Below are positions 1 through 62,300 of a stretch of DNA of 64,000 bases, one piece after another. A model generated the notes under the pieces. The model saw nothing but the letters and a program-made list of their open reading frames with translations, made no database searches and was not told the origin of the DNA. Both the position numbers and the translations under genes were made by a program. Numbering within the stretch: position 1 is the first letter of the stretch; the number at the start of each line of letters is the position of its first letter. This DNA is from Macrostomum lignano (Eukaryota): the NCBI GenBank assembly GCA_002269645.1, contig NIVC01001059.1:62001-126000 (forward strand), read 5' to 3'.

Positions 1-1415
<1,415 letters not shown>

Positions 1416-2030
1416 CAACTTAGTAACTGACTGAGAAAACTAAATAATAACTTTTGACTTGGGAAAGATTAGCCAGAATACGAAACCGGCCTTTCAACGC
1501 TTGGCGTCAAGCAAAAAGGCGCTTAACTCGAAATTCAGGTGCTGCCCAGTCCGAATTCGAATGTCTGTGGCCAGGGCTGCAGCAGTGAGAAGGGCCGCCG
1601 CTAATCCCAGTCCATCAAGTCTCCGCGGCGTTAATTCTCCATTAGTGGCGAGTCGCACCTGTCTTTGGGGCGCCCGTCAGCCATGTCAGCCTCGGCAGCC
1701 CGGGTCCACTTTCAAACAGACTCGGGACAAAAGCTGAAGGGCCTGGGGAAAATGGCTAAAGAGGGGATTAGCGAGAGGCAGCAGGGCTAATCTGATGTTT
1801 TGACAGCCGTGCCATATTGGGAGGGGCGCCTCGCCAGCTCGGGTGTCTGCCATCCTCAGGTGGTGCGGATTAGGACCAGATTTTCTCCTATTCGAAGCTC
1901 CCGGCTGCACTCGAGTCTCGGGTTTGTTTTGCTGCAGGCCTGAAAATAGACCGCCGGACAGCGGCAAAACACTAATAATTCTGACCCAGCTGCGGCAAGC
2001 ACGATGCTGCAGCTCCCATGAATAAGGGTT

Positions 2031-3254: not shown

Positions 3255-3294
3255 TGGCCAATGGCTTGCGACAGCAAAGTGCCGCTACTATAAA
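3255..3294 (+). promoter_or_regulatory. CCAAT box plus TATA box upstream of ILP-a
   Basis: TGGCCAATGG at 3255-3264 and TATAAA at 3289-3294, about 105 bp before the ATG. Confidence 0.5.
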
Positions 3295-3398
3295 CTGCCG
3301 GGCGGCTCCGCGGATGCTCCGGCGCAGGCCGCGGCCCCTCTCCGCATCTCCGTCTCGTTCAGCAACCTCTCGCTACTCTCTCCCATCAGCAGGCCTCG

Positions 3399-3885
3399 AT
3401 GCCGAGCTCAGCTGCCGTGTCCGCCTTCGCCCTGCTGGTGCTGGCGGCCATCTGCATGGCGCAGTGCAGCGCCAGCCAGCACTCCGACGTCATGGTGGTA
3501 GGCCCCCCCCTGCTCACTCTGCTGCTCACCCAACCGCTCCCGTCACTGTACTGTGCCTCAAACCCCTCTGCTTTGCAGGACAGGTACATCAGGAAGTGCG
3601 GCTACGATCTCGTCAGGACAATGTGGAAGGTGTGCAGCCGGAGAGGCGTCGCGGTGAAGCGGGGGCAGCTCAACAAACTTGGTGAGTAGCGGCGGGTGTC
3701 CCCCGGTTGCACTTTCAGCGCTTCAAGCCGCACCCTGTGCGATCATTTCAGTCACCGGCTTGGCCAAGCGGAGCAACAGGCACCGCCTGCCGGAGCTGCA
3801 GTGCCTCATCAAGCAGGAGGACGTGGTGTACCACTGCTGCTGCAACTGGTGCAAGCTGTCCTACCTGGAGCTGTACTGCGACTGA
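3399..3885 (+). CDS. Insulin-like peptide precursor ILP-a (111 aa, 3 exons: 3399-3497, 3579-3681, 3752-3885)
   Basis: Signal peptide MPSSAAVSAFALLVLAAICMAQCSA; GT-AG introns of 81 and 70 bp (phase 0, phase 1). B chain CGYDLVRTMWKVC (C-x11-C); KR-flanked C-peptide; A chain C-x10-CCC-x2-C-x8-C (..LQCLIKQEDVVYHCCCNWCKLSYLELYCD*). Family assignment is from the insulin cysteine pattern. Confidence 0.92.
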
Positions 3886-5682: not shown

Positions 5683-6336
5683 ATGCGCAGCTCGGCACTG
5701 ACGCTCTCGGCTCTGGTCCTCCTGGCTGTGGCGCTGTGCGGCAGCGGCTCGCAGCAGATTCGAACCCGGTCCGGCTCTGGGCTGGCTGAGGTAGGTCTTG
5801 AGCTGTTAAAGTTGCATTCAGCGCTATGCTATCCTAAACCAGCACGTTTTCGGCCCCAACGCAGCCTAAACTGCCGAGGCTGTGCGGCATCAGGCTGATC
5901 AGGAAGCTGTACGAGGTGTGCAAGGACCGCGGCGGCGTCTACAACGGTGGTCTCATGCGCCGCGTCAGACGCGACACCTCTAGCAGCTCAGGTGAGTTGG
6001 CTACCTCAGCCTCCGCCATCAGTGCTCACCTCAGCCTCCATCATCAGTGCTCACCCCAGCCTCCATCATCAGTGCTCACCCCAGCCTCCATCATCAGTGC
6101 TCACCCCAGCCTCCATCATCAGTGCTCACTCAGCCTCCATCATCAGTGCTCACCCCAGCCTCCATCATCAGTGCTCACCCCAGCCACTGCATCAATTTTC
6201 AGTCGGCCAGCTCCTGAAGCGCACCATAGGGCATTCCAAGCTCAAATGCCTGATTCCAAAGGACGACATTGTGCACCACTGCTGCACCTGCGGGCGGTGC
6301 ACCTTGTCCTACATGCAGCTGTACTGCAACTACTGA
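5683..6336 (+). CDS. Insulin-like peptide precursor ILP-b (122 aa, 3 exons: 5683-5790, 5865-5991, 6203-6336)
   Basis: Signal peptide MRSSALTLSALVLLAVALCGSGS; introns phase 0 and phase 1 as in ILP-a. B chain CGIRLIRKLYEVC; RRVRR and KR cleavage sites; A chain KCLIPKDDIVHHCCTCGRCTLSYMQLYCNY*. AATAAA at 6421-6426. Confidence 0.92.
6006..6184. repeat. 25-bp minisatellite in ILP-b intron 2
   Basis: Unit CCTCCATCATCAGTGCTCACCCCAG. Confidence 0.92.
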
Positions 6337-6884
6337 TCTGGCGGTGACAATGTCCCTCCACTCAAGGACTGCCCTTCACCTCCCTTTGCTTCTGTTAACC
6401 GAGCAATGACTGCGCTATAAAATAAACTCTATGAGGCTATTTTACCTGTGCATGACTCGGACTGCGCGATCTCTTTCATTCTTTAATATTCGACAGCACA
6501 GCACAGCTGGCCTGCACTGATGCTGGCTGACCTTCCGCCGGCAGCTGCAGATCTGCTGCATCAGCCAATACGGTGGGAGACCCGCGCGGTGTGCAAATCC
6601 GCGGTAATCCTCCATGCAGACGGGCAGTTGGATAATCCTTCGCTTCCAGCAGCGGGATTAGCGTCCCCAGCAATTAGTCTGACAGAGCTCGGGCCCAGTC
6701 AACCCCCAACCACCTGTGTGTCATCGAATTTCGGCGCTCGTTCAGCCGCAGTCTGAAGAAAGGGGGCGGCAAAATTCGTCAAAGCTGTTATTTCGAAAAT
6801 TGCTGCCTTCGAGGACAAGCAAAACGGAGTCGAAGTGTTGTTGTGTATTTTTTCTGCAGATAACTGCAGAGGCTCGGGTGAGAA

Positions 6885-15570: not shown

Positions 15571-15876
15571 AGCATACTACTTCCGGTTCAGTAGTGTACT
15601 ACTTCCGGTTCAACAGTGTACTACTTCCGGTTTAGTAGTGTGCTACTTCCGGCTCAGTAGTGTACTACTTCCGGTTCAATAGTGTACTACTTCCGGTTTA
15701 GTAGTGTGCTACTTCCGGTTCAGTAGTGTACTACTTCCGGTCCAGTATTATACTACTTTCGGTTCAATAAGTATACTACTTCCGGTTCAGTAGTATACTA
15801 CCTCTAATTCACTAGTCCAATGCTTCCGTTTCGGTAGCACGTGCTACTTCCGGCTTATTGTTTACAGCACTTCCGG
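15571..15876. repeat. ~21-bp minisatellite downstream of the ATPase stop codon
   Basis: Core TAGTGTACTACTTCCGGTTCA. Confidence 0.88.
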
Positions 15877-16008: not shown

Positions 16009-19000
16009 TTAGAAGCTTTCCAGAAAATCCAGCCAGTTGTTCTTCACCCCGGATGGCCTCAGCCGGAGCACCAGTTTCCTGATCTCGTCGTACATGAGGA
16101 TGAGGAAGCCGAAGGGCATTGCGGGCAGCCACCAGGTGAAGCGGAGCGGCTGCATCTGCAGGGCCTGGTTCAGGTAGGGCACGTAGACCATCACGATGGC
16201 CAGGCCGGTCTCAAACAGCAGCGAGAAGGACAGGAAATGATTCCACATGCCCTGCTGCAGCAGCGAGTTGCTGCGGGTCTTGCAGGCCAGGAGGTTGGCC
16301 CACTGCATCACCACAATGCTGGCAAAGAAAGCCGAGTGAGCTGTGTACTCCAGGCGCTTGCGCTGGTAATAGGACTGCGGGCAGAGCGCAGGGGCTTTGT
16401 TTGAGCTTGGATTCTTTTTTTAATACTTCCGGAAAGGTGATCAATTTGGTTACAACAGTTCGCATAGCTGCAGATTCCTACCTTGGTCCCATGCTTACCC
16501 TAAATCTACTCCCGGTTCTATGTAGTTTCCTGCTTCCACTTTGATGTAGTTTCCTACTTCCGGCCCCATGTAGTTTCCTACTTCCGGTCCCATGTAGTTT
16601 CCTACTTCCGGCCCCATGTAGTTTCCTACTTCCGGCCCCATGTAGTTTCCTAATTCGGGTTCCATGTAGTTTCCTACTTCCGATCCCATGTAGTTTCCTA
16701 ATTCGGGTTCTATGTAGTTTCCTGCTTCCAGTTTCATATAGTTTCCTACTTCCGGTCCCATATAGTTTCCTACTTCCGGTCCCATATAGTTTCCTACTTC
16801 CGATCCCATGTAGTTTCCTGCTTCCAGTCCCATGTAGTTTCCTAATTCGGGTTCTATGTAGTTTCCTGCTTCCAGTTTCAAATAGTTTCCTACTTCCGGT
16901 CCCATATAGTTTCCTACTTCCGGTCCCATATAGTTTCCTACTTCCGGTCCCATATAGTTTCCTACTTACGGTCCCATATAGTTTCCTACTTCCGATCCTA
17001 TGTAGTTTCCTACTTCCGGTCCCATGTAGTTTCCTAATTCGGGTTCTATGTAGTTTCCTGCTTCCAGTTTCATATAGTTTCCGACTTCCGGTCCCATATA
17101 GTTTTCTACTTCCGGTCCCATATAGTTTCCTACTTCCGGTCCCATATAGTTTCCTACTTCCGGTTCTAATATAGTTTCCTATTTCCGGTTCTAATATAGT
17201 TTCCTATTTCCGGTTGTTTATAGTTTTGTGCTTCCGGTTCTGTATAGTTTCCTATTTCCGGTTGTATGTAGTTTTGTGCTTCCGGTTCTGTATAGATGTA
17301 GGCGTATATTTTCCAACTTACGGCTCTTAGTTCCCCACTTTCAGCATAAAGTTCTATCAAAACTGCCTTGTTTCTATTGAGCCTATTGAAAATCCTTAGC
17401 CACTTCACACGTACTTAGGGGGTTCAGCAGGTCACTTCCGGTTAGCCTACTTCACGGCCGCACTCACCCACTCCTGGCCGTAGCTGTCCTCCAGGTCCAC
17501 GATGCCCTCGCTGTCCCACACCCGCCGGATGCCGAACAGCCGGCGCGGCCAAAAGCCGTTCTCGGACAGCACGACGAAGTAGGTGAAGAAGCCGCCGGCC
17601 GCCTGCAAGATGCCGATGCGGGCGAAGGCCGAGCTGAGCAGCCGCTCGCTCACTAGGCGGTCCCGGCGCGGATTCCTGGGATCGCGGCGCATGATGTCGC
17701 TTTCAGCCTCCTCGTAGGCCAGGGAGACGGCCGGGGCCAGGTCTGTGCCGAGGTCGATGCACAGGATGGTGATAGTGCCCAGGGGCAGCGGGATGCTGAC
17801 CACCAGGAAGGACAGGAAGCAGATGACCTCGGGCATGTTGGAGGTCAGCGTGTAGGCGATGGACTTCTTGAGGTTGTCGAACAGGATGCGGCCCTCCTCG
17901 ATGCCCGTGACGATGGAGGCGAAGTTGTCGTCCGCCAGCACCATGTCGGCGACCTGCGGCGGCGGTTGGTAAAAACGGCTGAGGCTCAGATCCCCAATCC
18001 CTTGACAGGCTCAGATCCCAATCTTCTGACAGGCTCAGATCCCCAATCCCCTGACAGGCTCAGATTCCCAATCCCCTGACATGCTCAGATCCCAAATCCA
18101 ATGACAGGCTCAGATCCCCAATCCCCTGACAGGCTCAGATCCCCAATCCCCTGACAGGCTCAGATCCCAAATCTCCTGACAGGCTCAGATCCCCAATCCT
18201 CTGAAGGCTCAGATCCCAAATCTCCTGACAGGCTCAGATCCCCAATCCTCTGAAGGCTCAGATCCCCAATCCCCTGACAGGCTCAGATCCCCAATCCCAT
18301 GACAGGCTCAAATCCCCAATCCCCTTACAGGCTCAGATCCCAAATCTTGACAGGTTCAGATCCCCAATCCCGACAGGCTCAGATCCCCAATCCCCTGACA
18401 TGCTCAGATCCCGAATCCCCTGACAAGCTCAGATCCCCAATCCCCTGACAGGCTCAGATCCCCAATCTCCTGTCAGGCTCAGATCCCCAATCCCCCGACA
18501 GGCTCAGATCCCAAATCCCCTGACAGGCTCACCTGCTTGCTGATGTCGCTGCCCGCCAGGCCCATGGCGATGCCGATGTCCGCCTGCCTGAGCGCCGGCG
18601 AGTCGCTCACGCCGTCGCCAGTGACCGCCACCACGTGACCCAGGCGCTGGCAGCTCTCCACAATGACCAGCTTCTGCTGCGGGGTGGTCCTGGCGAACAC
18701 GAGCTCCCGGTGAGTGCGCACCAGCTCGTCCAGCTGGCCGCTGGTCATCTCGGCCAGGTCGGAGCCGTGCACCACGCAGGCGTCGGCCTCCCGCGGGTCC
18801 ACGTGGGACGGGTCGACGCCGCGCTCCAGTGCGATGTCCTCCGCCGTCTTGCTGCGGCTGCTGATGATGTCCACGTGGCGGGCGATGGCCTTCGCCGTGA
18901 TTGGGTGGTCGCCCGTCACCATGATGACCTGGAAAGGTGGCGGTGAGATTCGGGTGGGCAGTGGCTGAGATTCGGGTGAGCAGTGGCTGAGATTCGGGTG

Positions 19001-22000
19001 GGCAGTGACTGAGATTCGGGTGAGACAGTAGCTGAGATTCGGGTGAGACAGTGACTGAGATTCGGGTGGGCAGTGACTGAGATTCGGGTGGGCAGTGACT
19101 GAGATTCGGGTGGGCAGTGGCTGAGATTCGGGTGGGCAGTGGCTGAGATTCGGGTGGGCAGTGGCTGAGATTCGGGTGAGACAGTAGCTGAGATTCGGAT
19201 GAGACAGTGGCTGAGATTCGGGTGAGACAGTGGCTGAGATTCGGATGAGACAGTGGCTGAGATTCGGGTGGACAGTAGCTGAGATTCGCGAGATTCGCGA
19301 AAAGCTAGCACACGCTAGCAACTGCCTACTTATAAGTAGCAAAACACGAGCACGAACAGAAAAGTTCATCCCTGCGCTCTCCCAGCTCCTCACCTTGATG
19401 CCTGCGGAGCGGCACTTCTGCACGGCGTCAGGCACGGAAGCCCTGGGCGGGTCAATCATGGAGATGAGGCCGAGAAACCGCAGCCCCATGAGCGGGAAGT
19501 TCACCTCCTCGGCGTTGAACTCGTATCGCTCGTCGAATTCGTCAGCGGACAGGCGGAGGTCGCAGAAGCCGAGGACCCGCTCGCCCTGGCCGCCCAGCTC
19601 GTTGTAGGCGGCGAGAAAGGAGCGGCGCCACTGGTCGGAGGTCTGCACCTCGCGGCCGTCAACCAGCAGGTGCGAGCATCTGTCAAAGATGATCTCCGGA
19701 GCGCCCTTCATCACCAGTAGGAAGTTGGAGCCGCGCTCCCGCATCACGTGCACGGAGGCCTGGGGCGAGGCGGAGGGGTGAAGAGGCACTTCCGGTGAAT
19801 ATTCTTGCTTAGAGTGAAAAGGCAATACTAAGTCACTTCCGATCCAATATTCTAGTCACTTCCGGTTTCGAGGGAAAAGGCAATCCAATAGTCTAGTCAC
19901 TTCCGGTTTAGAGGGAAAAGGCAATCCAATATTCTAGTCACTTCCGGTTTAGAGGGAAAAGGCAATCCAATAGTCTAGTCACTTCCGGTTTAGAGGGAAA
20001 AGGCAATCCAATATTCTAGTCACTTCCGGTTTAGAGGGAAAAGGCAATCCAATAGTCTAGTCACTTCCCGCCTCACCTGGAATTTGTTGGCGCTGCTGAA
20101 CGGAACCTCGCAAATCTTGGGATGTTGGCGCCGGAACTCCGGCACGCCGCCCACGCACCACTCCATGTACTTGAGCAGCGCGGACTCGGAAGCGTCGCCA
20201 ATGCAGTCCCGCTGCAGAATCGGCTTTTCCTCTTCGCCGGCTTTGAACTCCGCCCGGCTGCACAGCATGGCGCACCGGCTGAGGGCTACCCAGTCAGGGG
20301 ACTGCGGAGGCGCCGGGGCCGCGCCTTCGCCCATCTGGACCTCCGCGATGCGGCCGCTCTGCCAGGTGTGCGTCACCGTCATCCGGTTCATTGTCAGCGT
20401 GCCTGGCGGGGGCGGCATGTGGTTTTTTAGTTGAACTCAAGTCTGTTGCTAGGCAGTTGCTATGTGGTTTTTTAGGTGAACTCAAGTCTGTTACTAGGCA
20501 GTTGCTATGTGTTTTTAGGTGAACTTAAGCCTGTTGCTAGGTAGTTACTATGTGGTTTTTAGGTGAACTCAAGTCTGTTGCTAGGCGGTTGCTACTCGGT
20601 TTTACACCCTCAATAGTCTAGCAATCCCGTTCGCCATCGCCCCCACGCCAGACTCACCGGTCTTGTCCGAGCAGATGACGCTGGTGGCACCCAGAGTTTC
20701 CACAGCCTCCAGGTTGCGGACGAAGCAGTTCTTCGAGGCCATGCGCTGGGCGGTGAGGGTCAGGCAGACGGTGACGGTGGCCAGGAGGCCCTCCGGGATG
20801 TTGGCCACGATGATGCCGATGAGGAAGATGATGGAGTCCAGCCAGTCGTACTGCATGGCGAAGGAGGCGATGAAGAAGGCGGCGCCCATCAGCACGGCGA
20901 TGACGGTGACGATGTTGATGAAGCGCTCGATTTCCCGGCCGATGGGGGTCTGGCGGGCGTCCAGCCCGGAGGCCAAGTTGGCGATGCGCCCGATGAGGGT
21001 GGCGTCACCAGTGCGGATCACAATGCCGATGCAGTTGCCTGGTGGGGGGTGGTGAAATTCCAGCTCAGGTTCATGTGCTCAATCGCAGCGGGTCTGAAGC
21101 CAGTGGGATAAAATCCCCATCTCAGGTGCTCACTCTCTGAAGCTAGTGGGATAAAATCCCCATCTCAGATGCCTCACTCCCTGAAGTCAGTGGGATAAAA
21201 TCCCCATCTCAGGTGCTCACTCCCTGAAGCCAGTGGGATAAAATCCCCATCTCAGGTGCCTCCTCACTCCCTGAAGCCAGTGGGATGAAATCCCAATCTC
21301 AGGTGCCTCCTCACTCCCTGAAGCCAGTGGGATAAAATCCCCATCTCAGGTGCTCACTCTCTGAAGCCAGTGGGATAAAATCCCCATCTCAGATGCCCCA
21401 CTCTCTGAAGCCAGTGGGATAAAATCCCCATCTTAGGTGCACACTCCCTGAAGCCAGTGGGATAAAATCCCCATCTCAGGTGTACACTCTCTGAAGCCAG
21501 TGGGATAAAATCCCCATCTCAGGTGCACACTCCCTGAAGCCAGTGGGATAAAATCCCCATCTCAGGTGCCTCCTCACTCCCTGAAGCCAGTGGGATAAAA
21601 TCCCCATCTCAGGTGCTCACTCTCTGAAGCCAGTGGGATAAAATCCCCATCTAAGGTGCTCACTCCCTGAAGCCAGTGGGATAAAATCCCCATCTCAGGT
21701 GCACACTCCCTGAAGCCAGTGGGATAAAATCCCCATCTCAGGTGCACACTCCCTGAAGCCAGTGGGATAAAATCCCCATCTCAGATGCACACTCCCTGAA
21801 GCCAGTGGGATAAAATCCCCATCTCAGGTGCACACTCCCTGAAGCCAGTGGGATAAAATCCCCATCTCAGGTGCACACTCCCTGAAGCCAGTGGGATAAA
21901 ATCCCCATCTCAGGTGCACACTCCCTGAAGCCAGTGGGATAAAATCCCCATCTCAGGTGCACACTCCCTGAAGCCAGTGGGATAAAATCCCCATCTCAGA

Positions 22001-25000
22001 TGCCTCACTCTCTGAAGCCAGTGGGATAAAATTCCCATCTCAGGTGCTCACTTCCTGAAGCCAGTGGGATAAAATCCCAATCTCAGGTGCCTCCTCACTC
22101 CCTAAAGCCAGTGGGATAAAATCCCCATCTCAGGTGCTCACTCTCTGAAGCCAGTGAGATAAAATCCCCATCTAAGGTGCTCACTCCCTGAAGCCAGTGG
22201 GATAAAATCCCCATCTCAGGTGCCTCCTCACTCCCTGAAGCCAGTGGGATGAAATCCCAATCTCAGGTGCCTCCTCACTCCCTGAAGCCAGTGGGATAAA
22301 ATCCCCATCTCAGGTGCTCACTCTCTGAAGCCAGTGGGATAAAATCCCCATCTCAGATGCCCCACTCTCTGAAGCCAGTGGGATAAAATCCCCATCTTAG
22401 GTGCACACTCCCTGAAGCCAGTGGGATAAAATCCCCATCTCAGGTGCACACTCTCTGAAGCCAGTGGGATAAAATCCCCATCTCAGGTGCACACTCCCTG
22501 AAGCCAGTGGGATAAAATCCCCATCTCAGGTGCTCACTCTCTGAAGCCAGTGGGATAAAATCCCCATCTCAGGTGCTCACTCCCTGAAGCCAGTGGGATA
22601 AAATCCCCATCTCAGGTGCTCACTCTCTGAAGCCAGTGGGATAAAATCCCCATCTCAGGTGCACACTCCCTGAAGCCAGTGGGATAAAATCCCAATCTCA
22701 GGTGCCTCCTCACTCCCTGAAGCCAGTGGGATAAAATCCCCATCTCAGGTGCTCACTCTCTGAAGCCAGTGGGATAAAATCCCCATCTAAGGTGCTCACT
22801 CCCTGAAGCCAGTGGGATAAAATCCCCATCTCAGGTGCTCACTCTCTGAAGCCAGTGGGATAAAATCCCCATCTCAGATGCCTCACTCTCTGAAGCCAGT
22901 GGGATAAAATTGCCATCTCAGGTGCTCACTTCCTGAAGCCATTGAGATAAAATCCCAATCTCAGGTGCTCACTCTCTGAAGCCAGTGGGATAAAATCCCC
23001 ATCTCAGGTCCCTACTCTCTGAAGCCAGTGGGATAAAATTCCCATCTCAGGTGCTCACTTCCTGAAGCCAGTGGGATAAAATTCCCATCTCAGGTGCTCA
23101 CTCCCTGAAGCCAGTGGGATGAAATCCCCATTTCAGATGCTCACTCCCAGCGGGTTTGACGCCACAAAGGATAAAATCCCCATTCTTGGGCACTTACCCT
23201 CAACAGCGTAGGTAGAGAAGAACGCCAGGTTCTCTGTCTCCAGCGGGTTCTCGCTGGTGTACTCCCTGGAGCGCACCTGGGGATCGGACTCGCCAGTCAG
23301 ACAGGAGTTGTCCACCTTGAAGCGCTGCGCATTGATGATGCGGACATCGGCTGGCACCTGGTCACCGGCGTTGATCTCGACGATGTCACCGCGGACGAGT
23401 TTGGAAGTGAGGACGCGGCGCTTCTCGCCGTCGCGCAGCACGAGCGCCTGCTGGGGCAGGCTCTCCTTGAACTTGTCGATGATCTGGGCGGACTGGTGCT
23501 CCTGCGGCGGACGGCGGGATGACAGATTTGTGACTCTGGGCGCATCGCACATTCTTTATTTAACACAACTAACTGACTGACTAACTGACTAACTAACTAA
23601 CTAACTAACTAACTAATTTGTTAACTAACTAAAAGGTGAAACTAAATTTAGGGACTCACCTGGTAGTAGGAGAAGCCACCGGTCACAGCGACCACCACCA
23701 CCAGCACGATACCGATGTACAGGTTGTCTGCCGGGGGGCTTTCGTAGGCGCCGAACTCCACGCCATAGGCGATGAAGCAGAGGATGGCGCCAATGAGTAG
23801 CAGCAGGGAGAAGCCGCTGAAGACGGTCTTGGCGATTTGAACCCACTGCGGCGCGGCGGACGGCGGCGTCAGCTCGTTCGGGCCCTCCTGGGCGAGGCGC
23901 GCATCTGCGTCCTCCTGCGGCAGGCCGTGCGACTCCGAGGACTGCATGTAGTCCATGAGCGCCGCAAGGTCCATGCGGTGCTCGTCCATCTCGAACTCCT
24001 GGCGGAGGTCATCTGTGCGGTGCGGCCGGCCAGTGCGAGAGCCCTTCTCGCCGCGAAGGGTCTCGGCGCGGACTGCCTGCCGGAAGCTGTTGTCTCTCTG
24101 TGGTGCAAGATTTATGAGGCGGAATTAATGTTGGCATTCTTGAAGAATATAAAACACAACTAGAGTTTTAGCCATGTTATTGCCATAAGCATATAAACAG
24201 ATATAAACATAGGAAGTTTACCTTGCATAGGCCTAAAATATTAATATAAGTCTTTGTCTACAATCATGATGTAAATCTAAACTTGTAGCAAGAGTGAATT
24301 CATTGCTAAAAACAATGCTAAATAGCAAAAAAGCTTTAGATCATCTTAGTTACTCATATTCAAACTGCCAAAGAAGCAGTTTAGAGTAATGAAAAAATAT
24401 AAGTACATTGTTATCAATAAATTTGAAACATTTATTTTTCAGAATGAAATGCTTTATATTGTGCTTATTTAAGTAAATGGAGAAATCAAAAATTGATTTC
24501 TATAAAGAGGGCTTATTTCAAGGAGGCTAAATATACAAATGGAAATATACTATTTTTAACAATATCAAACATAAGAAAAAAGTTTGTACAAGTCTAAATC
24601 AAAAGCTGTAGCTAATATAACCAGGCATTTACTGTAAAATTATGCTTAGATTTTTTCCAGACAGCTTGGATTTGATTTTATGAATCATAACTCATTTGAA
24701 ATATTTTTCTTTTGCTTAATCAGTTAATGCCCAATTGTGAAAGGTAAATAAAACTAACCAACTTGTTTTTCATTGGAAAAATATACTGTTAAAATACAGA
24801 AACTACCAAGTAAAACGCGCTATTGGTAAAAAAATGTTTTTTTCTAATTTAACTTCTCCAAATTTTCCAGTCCAGTGTCATGTAGTAATATCTAACTGAT
24901 TTTTATAAATGTACAAATAACTTATAACGAGAGAAGAAACAAAATGCTGGAAATCCTGTGGCTAGGAATTTCTTAGCAATAACCCTTTAGTATAGGAATT

Positions 25001-25233
25001 ACTGAGCCAACTTCCCGCTGTTCCAAGCTATATTGCTAGGTCTAGACCGTCTAGGTACAAAGCTTGCAAAGTCATTTAACTTTTCGTTGGGTCTAGCGAA
25101 AAGAACCATGAAGTTGGAAACAGAAAAAATCTGCCTGCAACTAGGGGTAAACATGCAAATAAATATTATTATGTGAGTTACAATTAAAATTATAAAGTTA
25201 ATAAGAACGCTATAAACTTACCCCGTCATCCAT
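16009..25233 (-). CDS. ATP1A: Na+/K+-ATPase alpha subunit-like P2C ATPase, divergent (1024 aa, 9 exons: 25222-25233, 23660-24097, 23198-23501, 20658-21038, 20077-20402, 19394-19759, 18533-18928, 17468-17953, 16009-16374)
   Basis: All junctions are GT-AG with matching phases and sum to 3075 nt. Motifs: MDDGRDNSFR N-terminus, [24 protein letters not shown] (phosphorylated Asp), [42 protein letters not shown]. The 12-nt first coding exon is the least certain part. Confidence 0.95.
16520..17293. repeat. 24-bp minisatellite in ATPase intron 8
   Basis: Unit TAGTTTCCTACTTCCGGTCCCAT(A/G). Confidence 0.93.
17980..18532. repeat. 25-bp minisatellite in ATPase intron 7
   Basis: Unit AGGCTCAGATCCCCAATCCCCTGAC. 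Confidence 0.92.
18943..19290. repeat. 22-bp minisatellite in ATPase intron 6
   Basis: Unit GGCTGAGATTCGGGTGGGCAGT. Confidence 0.92.
19787..20068. repeat. 41-bp minisatellite in ATPase intron 5
   Basis: Unit GTCACTTCCGGTTTAGAGGGAAAAGGCAATCCAATA(G/T)TCTA. Confidence 0.92.
20418..20595. repeat. ~46-bp minisatellite in ATPase intron 4, ~4 copies
   Basis: Core GTGAACTCAAGTCTGTTGCTAGGCAGTTGCTATGTGGTTTTT. Confidence 0.85.
21095..23135. repeat. 43-bp minisatellite in ATPase intron 3, ~47 copies
   Basis: Unit CTGAAGCCAGTGGGATAAAATCCCCATCTCAGGTGCTCACTC(C/T); contains the small inverted repeat GGGAT-AAA-ATCCC. Confidence 0.96.
23567..23620. repeat. (TAAC)n microsatellite in ATPase intron 2
   Basis: Direct reading. 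Confidence 0.9.
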
Positions 25234-56300: not shown

Positions 56301-59300
56301 AGCTTACCGTATGGCATGATTTGTGTGTAATTAACCTACTATTTGATACCCTCACGGATCGATGGATTCCAGCTTACCGTATGGCATGATTTGTGTGTAA
56401 TTAACCTACTATTTGATACCTCACGGATCGATGGATTCCAGCTTACCGTATGGCATGATTTGTGTGTAATTAACCTACTATTTGATAAGCTCACGGATCG
56501 ATGGATTCCAGCTTACCGTATGGCATGATTGTGTGTAATTAACCTACTATTTGATACCTCACGGATCGATGGATTCCAGCTTACCGTATGGCATGATTTG
56601 TGTGTAATTAACCTACTATTTGATACCTCACGGATCGATGGATTCCAGCTTACCGTATGGCATGATTGTGTGTAATTAACCTACTATTTGATACCTCACG
56701 GATCGATGGATTCCAGCTTACCGTATGGCATGAGTGTGTGAATCCGCAGTTTGCCTTGGCAATTCCGTTCCTCACTGCGCTTAAGAATTTGCTGCTGAGA
56801 GTCGCCAACAGTGGAAACTATGAGCCCTTGACGGTGATCGAACTGAGCCAGGTCCGTTGGCTGAGGGGTTTGAAATGGTTATTTAAGAAGAACCCGTCGG
56901 TTTAACTTGTTGGCAGAAATTCAACATTGACTTACGATCGACCTTCTTGAAGCCCTCTCCTCCCAGTTGATCTCAACGTTTCGCGACAGCAGATCCCGGA
57001 TCTTGTCTGCAATTGGTTGTTCAGTTATACAGTCCGTTGTTGGTCATTACCAGAATGAGTAGAAAACCGAGCACTTACTGGTATATTTCGCCTTCATCGA
57101 AACCTTGTTAACTTTTCCAACTCTGCAGGTGGCAGAGATGATGTCATCTACGAACTGCGGCTCGACCAGCTCGCTGAATGTGCTTGTCTTGAAGCTGTGG
57201 ATGCCGTGCGGCACCGTTGCAATGCTGTCGAGCTGCTTTGCCTGGATGTCATCGCCAACTCCGACGGTGATGATTCGGCAGCCCAAGGCTTTGACCTTCG
57301 CGGCCTCCTTGATCGGGTCGACCTTGCTGTTGGAGGCTCCGTCGGTAACCAGAATGACGACACTCTCGGCGCCCTTGCTCTCGCCACCCCGATAGCCATT
57401 GACCTTGTTGAGCAGAAAGCGGCGGAAGGCCTTGATGGCGTCTCCGGTGTAGGTGGAGCCTGGAGAATATTCCATCTCCATCACTCGAGTGGTCATGGAG
57501 TCCAGGTGGTAGTGGGCGACGTAGTTGAAGATCACCTTCATTCTCTGCACGCTGGAGAACTTGAGCAGAGCCACGTGCGTGTTGTCGCGAGAAACGTCCA
57601 GCTTCTTTGCTACGGCAACAATGAAGCGCCGAATGTGCTCGAAGTTCCTGCCGCGAACGGAGTCAGAGGAGTCGATTAGGAAAGCGACGTCCATGCGCTT
57701 GCTGCAGGTGCGCTTGCACTTGGCTGATCCCGTCCACAGAATGTCATCGCACTGGTTGCGGCTGTTGACTCGCTGGGTGTACACCTTGATTGGCACAATC
57801 TTGCCATTGCAATGGCCAGTTTCCACCGCCGGCTTGGGGCAAGAGCAGCGGATCTCCTTGGTGCGTCTGCGTTGGATGCAGCCGCGAGTGAGGCGGTTGA
57901 ACTCGTAGAAGGTCTCATACATGATCTTGAAGTTGTTCACACACGGCAGGTATTTGCGGGTGGGCTTTGGGCAGGCTGAAATGCATTCATCAGTGATAGT
58001 TTTTTCATTCGACAAGACGGAATGCCATAAATTGTTTAAAAACTTACCGCATCTCGCAGTCTTAGTCTTAGTCACTGCTTTGCAATGACCGCCAGATTCG
58101 CCACCACTGATCAGCTTGTACTGCAGAATGGTGGTCTTCCTGTACTGGTTCTCGCATTTGCCAATGGTTTTCTTCGGACCGGGGCAGCCACAGCGGACTC
58201 TACTGTCCTTGGAGGAGCTTTCGCAAATGCCCTTCTTTTTATTTAACTTGAAGTAGGTAGTCGTAATTTTTTTAAACATTTTTTCGCACGGACCCGCCTT
58301 TGTGTCCGGCTTCGGACACGCGCAGCGCACCTTCTTAAAGTCCTGCTTCACAACCTTCTTGCAGCCGTAGCCCTTGGGCACGTACTCAACCCGGTGGATG
58401 GATTTGTAGTTGCCGACGCAGTCGCCATTGATTAAATACGGGTGCGGGCACACTGCAATTTCGGGCAATACAGAGTTAAGCAAGCTGGGTTATTAGCTTG
58501 AGTAATCCATCTAAGACACTCACGTGGCCTCTCGCAGTGGAAGGTGAGAACTCGGGCAACCAGGCCGTGGATGTCCTGGAACTCGCGCAGGCCGAAGATG
58601 AACACGCGGCCCTCGGGTCCGGCCAGCTTGGCCAGCTGGGCCCTGTTCTGCTTGGACTGCTCGCCGATGGCGATCGTGACGAAGAAAACGCCAGACCGCC
58701 TGACCAGCTTGGACTCGTAGAACTGGTCAACCTCGCCGTTGGATTCGGCACCGTCCGTGAGCAGGATGGTGACGTGGGGCACGTCCTCTCGCATGCCGGC
58801 GTGCTTCTGCCACATCTTGGTGCGCACCTCGTGCAGCGCCTCGCCGAGGAAGGTGAGACCGGGCTCGTACTGCATGGCCTCGATCTTCTTCAGGATCTCC
58901 TCGTGCGAGTTGTGCTCCCAGCTGTCCAGGTCCATGACAATCTTGTTCTTGTGGCTAAAGCGCATCACGCCGATTCGCTGGCGCTCACCGTTCTTCATAT
59001 AGAACTGCTGGACAACGTCGCGAACGAAGTTTTTCATGATGTAGAAGTTGTGCTCGGTCACGGTCAGGGACGAGTCCAGCATGAAGATCACGTCGGCCTT
59101 CTGAATGCAGACTGAGAAGTTTGAGAGAGTTTACCTTAGATGGATTCTTGCTTGAAAGTTGAAAGGAGAAAAGGTGCGCTTATTTTCTAGCATAGCCTTG
59201 CATCCGCGCCAGTTACTCACTGGGAACGTTCGGGCAGTCACTGGGGTGCACGCATTTGCCCTTGTGCAGCAGGAAGTACGGCCGGCACTCGCACTGCGGC

Positions 59301-62300
59301 CGTCGCTCCTTGGGGCACTTGCTGAACAGCACGGGCTCGTTGCAGGTCCTGGGCAGCCGGAGCCGCGCACTCGGAAATACTGGTGCCCGGGGCAGGGCGT
59401 GGGTTCGTTGCACTTTCCCTTGTAGTAGTACTTCTTGCCGGTGCACACTGCGGGTAGGCAATGCGGCAGAAAGAAATTGGTCGGGCTTCAAATATTTGCC
59501 CGAATTCCACTTGTGTGGATATGAGCTCCACTATTCATTCAATCTGAAAAAGAGGATCTGACACTACTGGGAAGAACCAGTTTGATTCGGATCCTTACTC
59601 TTCACGCAGCGGCCATCCTTGGTCTTCTTGAAGCCGGGGTCGCAGCCGACTTTGTAACATTTTCGGTCAGAGCGCAGCTTGTAGCCCTTGGGGCACTTTA
59701 TGGCTGAAATTCGAGACGTGAAATCCTCGTGAGCGCTCATAGCTAATCCCAGCTGAGTCTCACCACCTGCACTGGGCCTGCCTGCCTACCTTTCTTGCAG
59801 ATGTCTCGGAACAGGATCTGGCCTGGAGGGCAGTACTTGCGCACCTTCGGCATGCATTTGCCATCGAAGAATTCCGTTTTGGGCGGACAGTCGACTGAAT
59901 GTTTTTTGTTGCAATGGGCGGAGGAATTGAGTAGGGAATGGAAAAACTGATTGGCATGGATGCGAAGTCAGGCAATCAATTTAATTGAATTCAGTTTAAT
60001 GCAACAGAATATTTTAACTGCAGTGTTCTGCGAAAAAGGAATGCAATGATAAATAAAATCTCTGCTTTGCACTGCACTGTGGCAACAAGGCGGATTAAGC
60101 TGGGCTACATTTGCTTGAATTGAAAGCAAAGCAGATGCTGGAACTGCACTGTGAACAATGGAGTAGCAAAAGGTAGGATTTCGTTTTAGGATACGGCTGC
60201 GAGGGGAGATCAATTCGCCTCACCTTTTCTGCAGGTGCAGGTGGCTTTGTTCAGCGCCAGGCCCTTGCGGCAGCGCATTTTGCATTCGCACCGGCAGTCG
60301 CTCTTCTGGTCAAAGTTTCGGCCCGGGCACTTCTTCTTGCACTCTACAAGTCAATTAGACAGCTTTGGTGGAGCACTGGAGCTTGTTTCAGTCAAGGGGA
60401 TTGGGGATTAACTTCTTGCGCAAGGCAAGGCTTTGGAACTCAATATTTACCACAGGCACAGAGCTTAGCGTTGAGTTTCTTTTCTCCTTTGCAGGATTTC
60501 TTGCAGACCTTGGCCTTCTTGGGCTTCGAGGGCACGTGTCGGGGCACGCAGACGCAGCCCTTGACGAGGATCTCCGACTCCTTGCAGCTCTTCTTGCAGT
60601 CATCGCTGACGGACACATTGGGGACGCACTTGCACGGGACCACCAGCATAAAGCCCTTGGGGCATTTCAGGCTGCACTTGGGTTTCACTGGAATTGAGGG
60701 AGCAAAATTCATACTGCCCATGCTGCTCAAAGCAAAATACGCGCTGCTCAGTGCTCTAACGACGCTTCTGACTCACATGGGACGCACTCTCGGGCGATCA
60801 TCTGCAGTCCCTTGCCGCAGGACTTGAAGTCTTTAACTGAGGCAGCCTTGCCGCCTTCGCACAGGATGTCGGTGATAACCTTGCCGACTTTGCCGAGGTC
60901 TTCGAAATCGTTGACAACCGTGACGTACTTCTTATTGCTGGCCAGCTTCTCCAGGGCGCTCCTGGAGATGCCGGTGCCGATGCCGAGCGCCAAGACGGAG
61001 GCGCCCATCTTGCGCAGCTTGTTGGACTCAGCAACGGGGTTGGCGCGGCCGTTGGCGCGACCGTCGGTAAGAAGCACCACTACCGGCTTGGCCTCGGAGC
61101 GGTGGCCGTTCGCCTTCTGGAAGCCCTGCTCGCGGATCAGCTGGAAAGCCTCGCCGGTGACGGTCTTGCCGGATTTGTACCTGAATTTTGCCAGGTAGTT
61201 CGTGTGCGACCAATTCGGCATGGGTGAAGTACTGGGAAGCTGAATGAGCAACTTTTCCATTTTCAGAGGGTCGCTAATCAAACTCTAACAGCTTCTTAGT
61301 TTACAGCTCAAAAAGCAGACGGTAACCTAGTTGTAGCTTCTCATGTTGCGAGCGTGCATTGCAAGCGCTCGGGCATCTGCCCTCTTTTGTACTAAGGTGT
61401 CTGTCTGCTTGTGGTGATAGGCAGGAGGCACAGCTAGACTCAGAGGCTTACTCAAGGTCGTGCAGCAGGAACTGCAGGATGGCGTTGCGTTCCGCGGGCT
61501 TTCTCATGGAGTAGTCCTTCAGCTTGATGACCATGTCCGCCTTGTCCGAGAAGATCACGACGCCGAAGCGGAAGTTGCTGGATTTGCGCAGCAGTTTGGA
61601 GACGATCTCGTGAATGAATTTCGTCACCAGAGCGAAGTTCCTCCGGCCGACGGAGTGGGACGAGTCCAGTGCGAAGAAAATGTCCGCCTTTTGGCTGCAG
61701 CCTGGATTGCGTGGTGGGGCCGGCGTGATTGTTCTGGGATTTGCAGCAGAGTTCAAAGCGAAAGCCGGCAAGCAGGCAGACAGTCGGACCGGGCCCGGGG
61801 CTTGGGGCTTTCCCAGGGATTGACTGGCCAGGAGGCAATGCCAGAAAGATTAAAAGCAGGCTTTGGCGACGATGCAGAAGCAAGGAAGAATTCCCAAAAG
61901 GTTTTTAATTTGTTGTTTATAATGTACTGTTTTAGGTTGAAAATATCGTTTGGGTCGCAGTAGTGCTTGTATTAAGTCTTGTTTACACTTTTGTCAACAG
62001 ATGTTTCCTTTAGCGTAGAGGCCTGAACTACTTGCAGTAGTGTGGTTCAAAGATGAATTTAAATTAACGAATTACTACGAGAAATTCTAGGCAGTGCATG
62101 TACCGAGTTTTTTTACATAATTTTGCGAAACTTACGTAATGCTGAATTTTTTTTGCAAAAACAAGTTGAAGATGCATTGTTAGAGACAGTCAATAATTTT
62201 GGGGTTTCACATCGCACAGACAGACAGGTAGGTGCCTAGCACATTGTCTATGGCTCTGATGGACAGGTAGGTGCCTCGCACACTGTCTATGGCTTTGATG

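What the first reader, a model, noticed from the sequence alone, without database searches (positions are those of the whole stretch)
16009..16374. Na+/K+-ATPase paralogue with an apparently dismantled third Na+ site
Seen: M8 reads [12 protein letters not shown] (AAC at 16294-16296) where Na/K pumps have VQWADL, i.e. D926N in pig alpha1 numbering, and the C-terminus is WLDFLESF* instead of WVEKETYY*. Established: D926 and the terminal tyrosines form Na+ site III and the C-terminal pathway, and the equivalent ATP1A3 D923N sharply lowers Na+ affinity. Sites I/II (E327, S775, N776, E779, D804, D808) are intact, and the H/K-pump Lys (M5) and Arg (M8) are absent. Inference: a natural pump with altered stoichiometry (perhaps 2:2 electroneutral) or altered selectivity, reached by a route different from H/K-ATPases.
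Basis: partly seen in the sequence, partly recalled or inferred. Interest (0 to 1): 0.75.

Follow-up and report, generated by a model that had tools for sequence, protein, structure and literature searches.

The report
Flatworm sodium-pump paralogue lacking site-III aspartate
A free-living flatworm (Macrostomum lignano) keeps under strong selection a fast-evolved extra copy of the sodium-potassium pump that has lost the acidic residue and tail tyrosines of the third sodium site, so it is a natural test case for how that site sets pump affinity and stoichiometry, although nobody has measured its function.

Summary
Window 16009-16374 (minus strand) is the last exon of a 9-exon, 1024-aa P2C ATPase alpha gene, Macrostomum lignano Mlig017217. 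M8 reads [12 protein letters not shown]: Asn (AAC, 16294-16296) where pig alpha1 has D926. The protein ends WLDFLESF*.

It is not an error or a pseudogene. Three genomic copies differ at 29 codons, all synonymous, and one copy uses AAT for the Asn. The GenBank models are transcript-derived. The canonical paralogue encodes its YY tail in the homologous last exon, so no hidden YY exon is expected, and none lies in the 16 kb downstream.

The protein differs at 86 of 535 near-invariant columns, against 2 of 536 for the canonical paralogue. These include N713S in TGDGVND (the SERCA equivalent abolishes transport), P782C and R934S. Sites I/II and the other catalytic motifs are intact.

Published Asp-to-Asn mutants at this position still carry net outward current, with 80-100-fold lower Na+ affinity and slower turnover. 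A low-affinity, still electrogenic pump is therefore more likely than a 2:2 electroneutral one.

Asp loss together with YY loss also occurs in a separate copepod-type clade. This is a new variant of a known kind, of moderate interest, and its function is untested.

The parts
25222..25233 (-). Exon 0: ATG GAT GAC GGG (MDDG), followed by a gtaagt donor. This is the likely start codon.
   Evidence: It matches the N-termini of P0122 and P0123 and the internal MDDG of P0121.
23660..24097 (-). Exon 1: RDNSFRQ...GFSYYQ (N-terminal segment, M1 and M2).
   Evidence: It has a cag acceptor and a gtgagt donor.
23198..23501 (-). Exon 2: A domain, including TGES.
   Evidence: GT-AG splice sites.
20658..21038 (-). 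Exon 3: M3 and M4 (E327 at 20791-20793) and the phosphorylation site DKTG (D369 at 20665-20667).
20077..20402 (-). Exon 4: first part of the N domain.
19394..19759 (-). Exon 5: N domain (KGAPE, DPPR).
18533..18928 (-). Exon 6: P domain (MVTGD, TGDGVSD).
18605..18607 (-). AGC = Ser at the position of pig N713 in the TGDGVND motif.
   Evidence: The position is Asn in 115 of 115 protostome homologues and in 142 of 151 diverse P2C sequences scored, none of which has Ser.
17468..17953 (-). Exon 7: M5, M6 and M7 plus the SYGQ loop. It holds Y771, S775, N776, E779, D804, T807 and D808, and P782C at 17819-17821.
16009..16374 (-). Exon 8 (the finding): M8, M9 and M10, the C-terminal tail and the stop codon.
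   Evidence: It has a cag acceptor, and the same exon boundary (QEW|S/T-Y) as the canonical paralogue.
16294..16296 (-). AAC = Asn at the position of pig D926 (Na+ site III).
   Evidence: The codon is AAT in copy L003.
16270..16272 (-). AGC = Ser at the position of pig R934 (M8-M9 loop, next to R933, which contacts the C-terminus).
   Evidence: The position is Arg or Lys in 115 of 115 homologues.
16012..16035 (-). The tail WLDFLESF, in place of WLERETYY.
   Evidence: It is identical in all three genomic copies.

Best explanation
This is an intact, transcribed and selectively maintained gene (Macrostomum lignano Mlig017217; 9 exons, 1024 aa). It encodes a fast-evolved, lineage-restricted paralogue of the Na+,K+-ATPase alpha subunit (P2C type). 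The protein keeps the phosphorylation machinery, the ligands of cation sites I and II, and the SYGQ beta-subunit loop. It is therefore most likely still a beta-dependent, ATP-driven Na+/K+ exchanger. The Na+-specific site III is weakened in three places: Asn for D926, Ser for the basic residue 934, and SF for the terminal YY after a 3-residue insertion. Engineered pumps carrying the same changes suggest the expected behaviour. Cytoplasmic Na+ affinity should be much lower and turnover slower. Inhibition by extracellular Na+ should be small or absent, and the proton leak through site III should be small. Transport should still be net outward, that is electrogenic, rather than 2:2 electroneutral. 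N713S in the P domain probably slows the E1P-E2P steps further. Shown here: gene structure, identity, residue states, purifying selection and rarity of the changes. Inferred: every transport property.
For: Identity: TIGR01106 (P2C alpha) scores 1507 bits against a cutoff of 946, and the best solved structures are pig, shark and human Na,K-ATPase alpha. The model matches GenBank BOX15_Mlig017217g1 at 100%. Function is maintained: three genomic copies differ at 29 codons, all synonymous and none non-synonymous (about 713 synonymous and 2239 non-synonymous sites; P about 1e-18 under neutrality). The Asn codon itself varies AAC/AAT. All eight introns are GT-AG. The GenBank annotation of this assembly was built from RNA-seq-based transcript assemblies (PMC5730564). 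The machinery is retained: DKTGT, TGES, KGAPE, DPPR, MVTGD, D710, D714, E327, Y771, S775, N776, E779, D804, T807, D808, Q923 and SYGQ are all present. Mutant precedent: rat D928N has about 80-fold lower Na+ affinity and 40% turnover, and all mutants in that study supported cell growth (PMC13607240). With Asp at 314, which is the state this protein and most protostome pumps have, the loss is only about 9-fold. Xenopus D935N shows outward K+-activated current insensitive to extracellular Na+, about one third of the turnover, normal charge movement, and proton import about 12% of the parent pump (PMC3971657). Loss of YY otherwise amplifies that leak.
Against: No transport measurement exists for this protein. 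It differs from the canonical consensus at 86 of 535 near-invariant columns, so single-mutant data from vertebrate pumps may not transfer. The exact equivalent of N713S in SERCA (N706S) abolished Ca2+ transport and ATPase activity, which argues that this protein might not cycle at all. Given a 16% background replacement rate, hitting D926 alone is not statistically remarkable. No orthologue from another species was found, so the age and the selective history of the changes are unknown.
Confidence: 0.5

Rival explanations
1. Site III is no longer used, and the pump runs with a reduced or altered stoichiometry (2Na:2K electroneutral, 2Na:1K, or Na+ replaced by H+). It reached this state without the Lys and Arg that H,K-ATPases use.
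For: The site-III carboxylate, the basic residue 934 and the YY cap are all changed, while sites I and II are untouched. Across the animal-type sequences collected here, loss of Asp-926 always goes with loss of YY: non-Asp and non-YY 16, non-Asp with YY 0, Asp with YY 243, Asp without YY 3. In the copepod-type clade the residue at 926 wanders (S, C, V, A, T, N), as expected if the site is unused. Bulky Ser777 mutants show that Na+ at site II alone can trigger phosphorylation (PMC10812997). Natural pumps with reduced stoichiometry exist, for example Artemia alpha2KK at 2Na:1K (PMC10756188).
Against: The same Asp-to-Asn change in Xenopus alpha1 leaves a net outward current and wild-type-like Na+ charge movement. 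Asn can still act as a ligand. Y771, T807, Q923 and E954 are retained. No positive charge is introduced to replace the missing Na+, unlike in H,K-ATPases and alpha2KK. The association count covers only about two independent lineages.
Confidence: 0.2
2. The protein no longer works as an efficient pump. It is a very slow or non-cycling alpha-like subunit, kept for another role such as junctional or scaffolding function, signalling, or regulating or competing for beta subunits. Pump-independent roles are described for other invertebrate alpha subunits, for example Drosophila Atpalpha in septate junctions and C. elegans CATP-1 (from my own knowledge, not checked here).
For: Asn-713 of TGDGVND is Ser. 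That position is Asn in 115 of 115 protostome homologues and in 142 of 151 diverse P2C sequences, and is never Ser. SERCA N706S was devoid of transport and ATPase activity although phosphorylation from ATP was normal. There are 86 changes at near-invariant columns against 2 in the canonical paralogue, 15 of them radical, including P782C in M5 and the Arg after KGAPE changed to Ile.
Against: In a protein this diverged, nearly every catalytic and ion-coordinating residue is still in place. That is hard to explain without selection for ion binding and phosphoryl transfer. N706S evidence comes from a different P2 pump and from a meeting abstract. Purifying selection is strong, although it does not say for what.
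Confidence: 0.22
3. Artefact or dead gene. The Asn and the odd tail would come from an assembly error, a decaying duplicate, or a mis-called last exon whose real transcript ends in YY.
For: M. lignano DV1 is a recent polyploid with much redundant sequence. A GTGAAG lies at PSG|VK and could in principle act as a splice donor.
Against: Three separately assembled copies give an identical protein with 29 synonymous and no non-synonymous differences. The Asn codon is AAC or AAT and never GAC. There are no frameshifts or stops, and all splice sites are canonical. No Trp-x-Glu...YY-stop exon lies anywhere in the 16 kb downstream. The canonical paralogue encodes its tail in the homologous exon. The transcript-derived annotation ends at the same stop.
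Confidence: 0.03

Closest known systems
Canonical animal Na+,K+-ATPase alpha subunit (pig alpha1, PDB 3WGU; M. lignano Mlig021528)
   Same: It has the same family profile, the same domain order and ten-helix layout by alignment, and the same catalytic motifs, site I/II ligands and SYGQ loop. It is 66% identical to the canonical M. lignano copy (about 62% on average to other protostome pumps), and four intron positions are shared with that copy.
   Different: D926N, YY changed to SF after a 3-residue insertion, R934S, N713S and P782C. Overall it differs at 86 of 535 near-invariant columns, against 2 of 536 for the canonical copy. Its N-terminus is short and poor in lysine.
Engineered and disease mutants at the site-III aspartate (human ATP1A3 D923N, rat alpha1 D928N, Xenopus D935N) and C-terminal mutants (delta-YY)
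   Same: The residue changes are the same: Asp to Asn at the site-III aspartate, and loss of the tyrosine pair.
   Different: Here the changes are fixed by selection in a wild gene and combined with many others. The mutants are single changes in a canonical background. They show low Na+ affinity, slower turnover and electrogenic transport.
Artemia and Daphnia alpha2KK pump (2Na:1K)
   Same: It is also a natural, paralogue-specific remodelling of the cation sites of an invertebrate sodium pump that coexists with canonical copies.
   Different: alpha2KK places lysines at N324 and N776 (pig numbering). Here both are Asn, no positive charge is added, and the change is at site III. alpha2KK has been measured and this protein has not.
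Gastric and non-gastric H+,K+-ATPases
   Same: They belong to the same P2C family, and site III is not used for Na+.
   Different: H,K pumps keep the M8 Asp and the YY tail and block the site with Lys (M5) and Arg (M8). Here those positions are Ser-775 and Cys-930.
Copepod-type divergent alpha paralogues (Tigriopus californicus TCAL_08725 and unnamed marine metatranscriptome sequences)
   Same: Residue 926 is not Asp (T, S, C, V, A or N), the penultimate Tyr is lost, and the tail often ends in Phe. Sites I and II are largely kept.
   Different: They are only 47% identical to the flatworm protein and form a separate branch in a neighbour-joining tree. They keep Asn-713 and change N324. They share no more derived states with the flatworm protein than other distant P2C lineages do.

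Membership tests
P2C-type ATPase alpha subunit (Na,K / H,K; TIGR01106) | Full-length match to the family profile above the curated cutoff | tested here: met
   1506.9 bits against a cutoff of 946.1, covering profile positions 5-990 of 997. All five expected Pfam domains are present.
P2C-type ATPase alpha subunit (Na,K / H,K; TIGR01106) | P-type catalytic motifs: DKTGT, TGES, KGAPE, DPPR, MVTGD, TGDGVND | tested here: inconclusive
   Five motifs are intact. The sixth reads TGDGVSD, i.e. N713S.
P2C-type ATPase alpha subunit (Na,K / H,K; TIGR01106) | Beta-subunit dependence (SYGQ motif in the M7-M8 loop) | tested here: met
   DSYGQEW is present. Actual beta binding was not tested.
Canonical 3Na:2K Na+,K+-ATPase | Site I/II ligands E327, S775, N776, E779, D804, D808 | tested here: met
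   All are present.
Canonical 3Na:2K Na+,K+-ATPase | Site III ligands Y771, T807, Q923 and D926, with E954 nearby | tested here: not met
   D926 is Asn. The other four are present.
Canonical 3Na:2K Na+,K+-ATPase | C-terminal ...ETYY, with the basic pair R933/R934 | tested here: not met
   The tail is ...LESF. R933 is kept and R934 is Ser.
Canonical 3Na:2K Na+,K+-ATPase | Electrogenic exchange of 3 Na+ for 2 K+ per ATP | not testable with these tools
   This needs flux and current measurements.
H+,K+-ATPase | Lys in M5 (at pig S775) and Arg in M8 (at pig C930) | tested here: not met
   The residues are Ser and Cys.
alpha2KK-type reduced-stoichiometry pump | Lys at pig N324 (M4) and N776 (M5) | tested here: not met
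   The sequence reads ANIPEG and TSNMPE, so both positions are Asn.

The most novel reading that the evidence does not exclude
Animal genomes repeatedly evolve a second class of sodium pump that has given up the Na+-specific third site. This would have happened at least twice: in the Macrostomum Mlig017217 gene and in a copepod-type clade that includes Tigriopus TCAL_08725. In both lineages the M8 aspartate and the C-terminal tyrosine cap are lost together. These pumps would move fewer Na+ per ATP (2:2 or 2:1), or would work only at high Na+ loads, giving euryhaline invertebrates a pump able to work against steeper gradients. The route is different from both the H,K-ATPases and the brine-shrimp alpha2KK.
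Probability: 0.2. Interest if true: 0.8.

Novelty: new variant of a known kind. Interest (0 to 1): 0.5.

Why it matters
How the third, Na+-specific site and the C-terminal tail set the 3:2 stoichiometry, Na+ affinity, voltage dependence and proton leak of the sodium pump is known almost entirely from disease mutations and engineered mutants. Here selection itself has fixed the 'disease' substitution (human ATP1A3 D923N) together with loss of the tail tyrosines, and the protein is kept under strong purifying selection. It therefore offers the set of accompanying changes that make such a pump useful. A second, independent animal lineage shows the same joint loss. That makes the functional coupling of the aspartate and the tail testable by comparison. 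M. lignano has RNAi and transgenesis, so the physiological role could be tested, for example salinity tolerance in an intertidal worm. If the protein turns out not to pump because of N713S, it would instead be a clear case of a P-type ATPase retained for a non-transport role.

Tried and rejected
1. Alternative last exon. I scanned all three minus-strand frames in the 16 kb downstream for YY-stop or E..[YF][YF]-stop peptides. The only hit (15787-15843...ELEVVYY*) lies inside a tandem repeat and has no Trp-x-Glu motif. Rejected.

2. Orthologues in other species. The full-length search found nothing between 67% and 100% identity. A search with the last 162 residues found no close fragment. So no phylogeny of the changes, and no branch dN/dS, was possible.

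3. Ancient common paralogue family. The flatworm protein and the copepod-type clade are both changed at 42 near-invariant columns, against 22.6 expected. This looked like a shared origin. A control showed that unrelated divergent P2C lineages share just as many identical derived states with it: 13-24 against 13-18. The overlap therefore reflects unequal constraint among columns. Rejected as evidence of common ancestry.

4. E312D as a specific compensatory mutation. It is the known partial rescuer of D928N. However, Asp is the majority state in protostome pumps (96 of 115), so it is background and not compensation.

5. Literature. Searches for the gene name and protein accessions found nothing. 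Searches for natural site-III or YY variants in invertebrates found nothing relevant. The key paper Einholm et al. 2010 is not held.

6. Naming other sequences. Cluster look-ups gave no organism names for the non-Asp environmental sequences.

7. Structure prediction. Not run, because the tool returns only confidence values, which could not show whether the new tail docks.
Full report
WHAT IS THERE

The finding's coordinates (16009-16374) are the last exon of a gene on the minus strand. Translation gives [37 protein letters not shown]...[17 protein letters not shown]. I assembled a model from open frames and splice sites, first eight exons and then the short first exon. The final model has nine exons:
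- 25233-25222
- 24097-23660
- 23501-23198
- 21038-20658
- 20402-20077
- 19759-19394
- 18928-18533
- 17953-17468
- 16374-16009

The CDS is 3075 nt and encodes 1024 aa. All eight introns are GT-AG and there is no internal stop. The introns are packed with minisatellites.

The protein matches GenBank 'hypothetical protein BOX15_Mlig017217g1' of the flatworm Macrostomum lignano at 100%. The window is contig NIVC01001059.1 of assembly GCA_002269645.1.

FAMILY

The protein scores 1507 bits on TIGR01106, the P2C alpha-subunit model, against a cutoff of 946. All five expected Pfam domains are present. Its best solved relatives are pig, bovine, human and shark Na,K-ATPase alpha.

In the gapless alignment to pig alpha1 (3WGU), the Asn of VMQWANLL falls on residue 926. 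It is encoded by AAC at 16294-16296. E327, Y771, S775, N776, E779, D804, T807, D808, Q923, C930 and E954 are all present. So are DKTGT, TGES, KGAPE, DPPR, MVTGD, D710, D714 and the SYGQ loop.

IS IT REAL AND ALIVE?

The assembly holds three distinct copies of the gene: the window (identical to L002), L003 and L001 (Mlig017217g3). Over 2955 nt they differ at 29 codons. Every difference is synonymous. With about 713 synonymous and 2239 non-synonymous sites, the chance of this under neutrality is about 1e-18. Pairwise dS is 0.022-0.035.

The Asn codon itself is AAC in two distinct copies and AAT in the third, and no copy has GAC. The tail is identical in all copies.

The GenBank annotation of this assembly was built from RNA-seq-based transcript assemblies, with ORFs called on the transcripts (PMC5730564). 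The annotated CDS ends at the same stop.

The canonical M. lignano pump gene (Mlig021528; P0003, L004) has its last intron at the same QEW|TY position. It encodes NWLERETYY* inside that last exon. There is therefore no reason to expect a separate YY exon. None is present in the 16 kb downstream. Artefact, pseudogene and mis-called exon are thus effectively excluded.

HOW UNUSUAL IS IT?

Among 115 protostome homologues, position 926 is Asp in all. Of the 119 homologues from that search whose M8 and tail could be scored, 117 end in YY.

These two features are not the only changes. Of 535 columns that are at least 97% conserved in those homologues, this protein differs at 86. The canonical M. lignano copy differs at 2 of 536. 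Mean identity to other protostome pumps is 62%, against 78% for the canonical copy. So this is a long-branch paralogue.

Changes never seen in the 115 homologues include:
- N713S in the catalytic TGDGVND motif (AGC at 18605-18607).
- P782C in M5.
- R934S beside R933, which contacts the C-terminus (basic in 115 of 115).
- D926N.

The tail is not truncated. After the Trp it has the same length as the canonical tail (WLERETYY against WLDFLESF). The terminal Tyr becomes Phe, the penultimate Tyr becomes Ser, and three extra residues precede the Trp.

With a 16% background replacement rate, a hit on D926 alone is unremarkable. D926 together with both tyrosines is expected about 0.4% of the time under independence. 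The catalytic and ion-binding residues are, if anything, better kept than the background.

WHAT THE CHANGES SHOULD DO, FROM PUBLISHED MUTANTS

Rat alpha1 D928N and human alpha3 D923N lose about 80-fold and more than 100-fold in Na+ affinity. Their turnover is 40% and 11% of wild type. All mutants in that study supported cell growth. With Asp instead of Glu at rat position 314, the loss is only about 9-fold (PMC13607240). This protein has Asp there, but so do 96 of 115 protostome pumps, so it is background and not a specific compensation.

Xenopus D935N is expressed normally and has normal Na+ charge movement. It still carries K+-activated outward current at about one third of the turnover. That current is insensitive to extracellular Na+, and proton import through site III falls to about 12%. 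Removing YY, by contrast, amplifies that leak (PMC3971657). Simulations suggest that D926N loses Na+ selectivity at sites II and III (PMC5026471).

The direct precedent therefore argues against 2:2 electroneutral transport from Asp-to-Asn alone. It points to a low-affinity, slower, still electrogenic pump that is little affected by external Na+ and leaks few protons.

Against any simple transfer of these data stands N713S. In SERCA, N706S had normal phosphorylation from ATP but no Ca2+ transport or ATPase activity. Its conformational transitions were slowed and it formed no E2P from Pi (meeting abstract in PMC2268108). This supports a rival in which the protein cycles very slowly or has a non-transport role.

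RELATIVES WITH THE SAME FEATURES

A search of 1.84 billion cluster representatives shows that Asn at 926 with otherwise canonical I/II ligands is common outside animals. Examples are Paratrimastix, Chilomastix, Neobodo, Andalucia and a Desulfuromonadia genome bin. The Asn is therefore compatible with a working P2C-type ATPase fold.

Within animal-type sequences there is a separate clade. It includes Tigriopus californicus TCAL_08725 and unnamed marine metatranscriptome sequences. In it, residue 926 is T, S, C, V, A or N, and the tails end ETCF, ETQF, ETQY or ELTF.

Across the animal-type sets the counts are:
- Asp with YY: 243
- Asp without YY: 3
- non-Asp without YY: 16
- non-Asp with YY: 0

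The Fisher P value is about 7e-23. These cells count sequences, not events, and represent only about two independent lineages.

The copepod-type clade is 47% identical to the flatworm protein and sits on its own branch in a neighbour-joining tree. It shares no more derived states with the flatworm protein than other distant P2C lineages do. The joint loss therefore looks convergent, which supports a functional link between the aspartate and the tail. The tree is distance-based and subject to long-branch effects, so this is provisional.

VERDICT

It is best described as a new, uncharacterised variant of the Na,K-ATPase alpha subunit, with a weakened third Na+ site and an altered catalytic Asn.

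My preferred mechanism is a low-Na+-affinity, slow, still electrogenic pump (confidence about 0.5). Altered stoichiometry (0.2) and a slow or non-pumping role (0.22) remain open. Only expression and flux/current measurements can decide between them.

No paper in the searchable library mentions this gene or natural animal pumps lacking Asp-926.

Noticed in passing
window 18605-18607 (minus strand): The catalytic P-domain motif reads TGDGVSD instead of TGDGVND. Asn at this position is invariant in all 115 protostome homologues, and none of 151 diverse P2C sequences has Ser. The SERCA equivalent N706S abolished transport in a published abstract.
   Followed up: partly
proteins P0373 (Tigriopus californicus TCAL_08725), P0345, P0350-P0357, P0363, and fragments P0152-P0159: A separate, unnamed clade of animal-type pump alpha subunits, mostly from marine metatranscriptomes. 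Residue 926 is T, S, C, V, A or N, and the tail ends ETCF, ETQF or ETQY instead of ETYY. N324 in M4 is also changed to C, A or S.
   Followed up: partly
window 36190-56740: A 20.5-kb satellite array with a 69-bp unit (also read as 140 bp), about 298 copies, 97% matches.
   Followed up: no
window 21094-23148, 19842-20068, 18944-19288, 17982-18531, 16506-17286: Most introns of the pump gene are largely filled by their own minisatellites (units of 43, 41, 22, 25 and 24 bp). Intron lengths differ between the three genomic copies.
   Followed up: no
window 5838-6344 (+) and 3294-3686 (+): Two open frames look like insulin-like peptide genes downstream of the pump gene. The first matches Pfam Insulin at 21.6 bits, just below the 23-bit cutoff (B-chain-like LCGIRLIRKLYEVC). 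The second has a similar KCGYDLVRTMWKVC but no Pfam hit. A gene with a weak Insulin hit is called at the matching place in all three copies (L001-L003).
   Followed up: partly
window 57050-58489 (-) and 61451-61849 (-): Exons encoding von Willebrand factor type A domains (Pfam VWA, E = 1e-37 and 1e-12), next to cysteine-rich repeats.
   Followed up: no
window 1-1432 and 2031-2392: Long simple repeats: (TAACTAAC) about 179 copies and (AGTC) about 90 copies.
   Followed up: no
window 16270-16272 and 17819-17821 (minus strand): R934S (basic in 115 of 115 homologues, beside the Arg that contacts the C-terminus) and P782C (Pro in 115 of 115, in the M5 helix that carries the site I-III ligands).
   Followed up: partly
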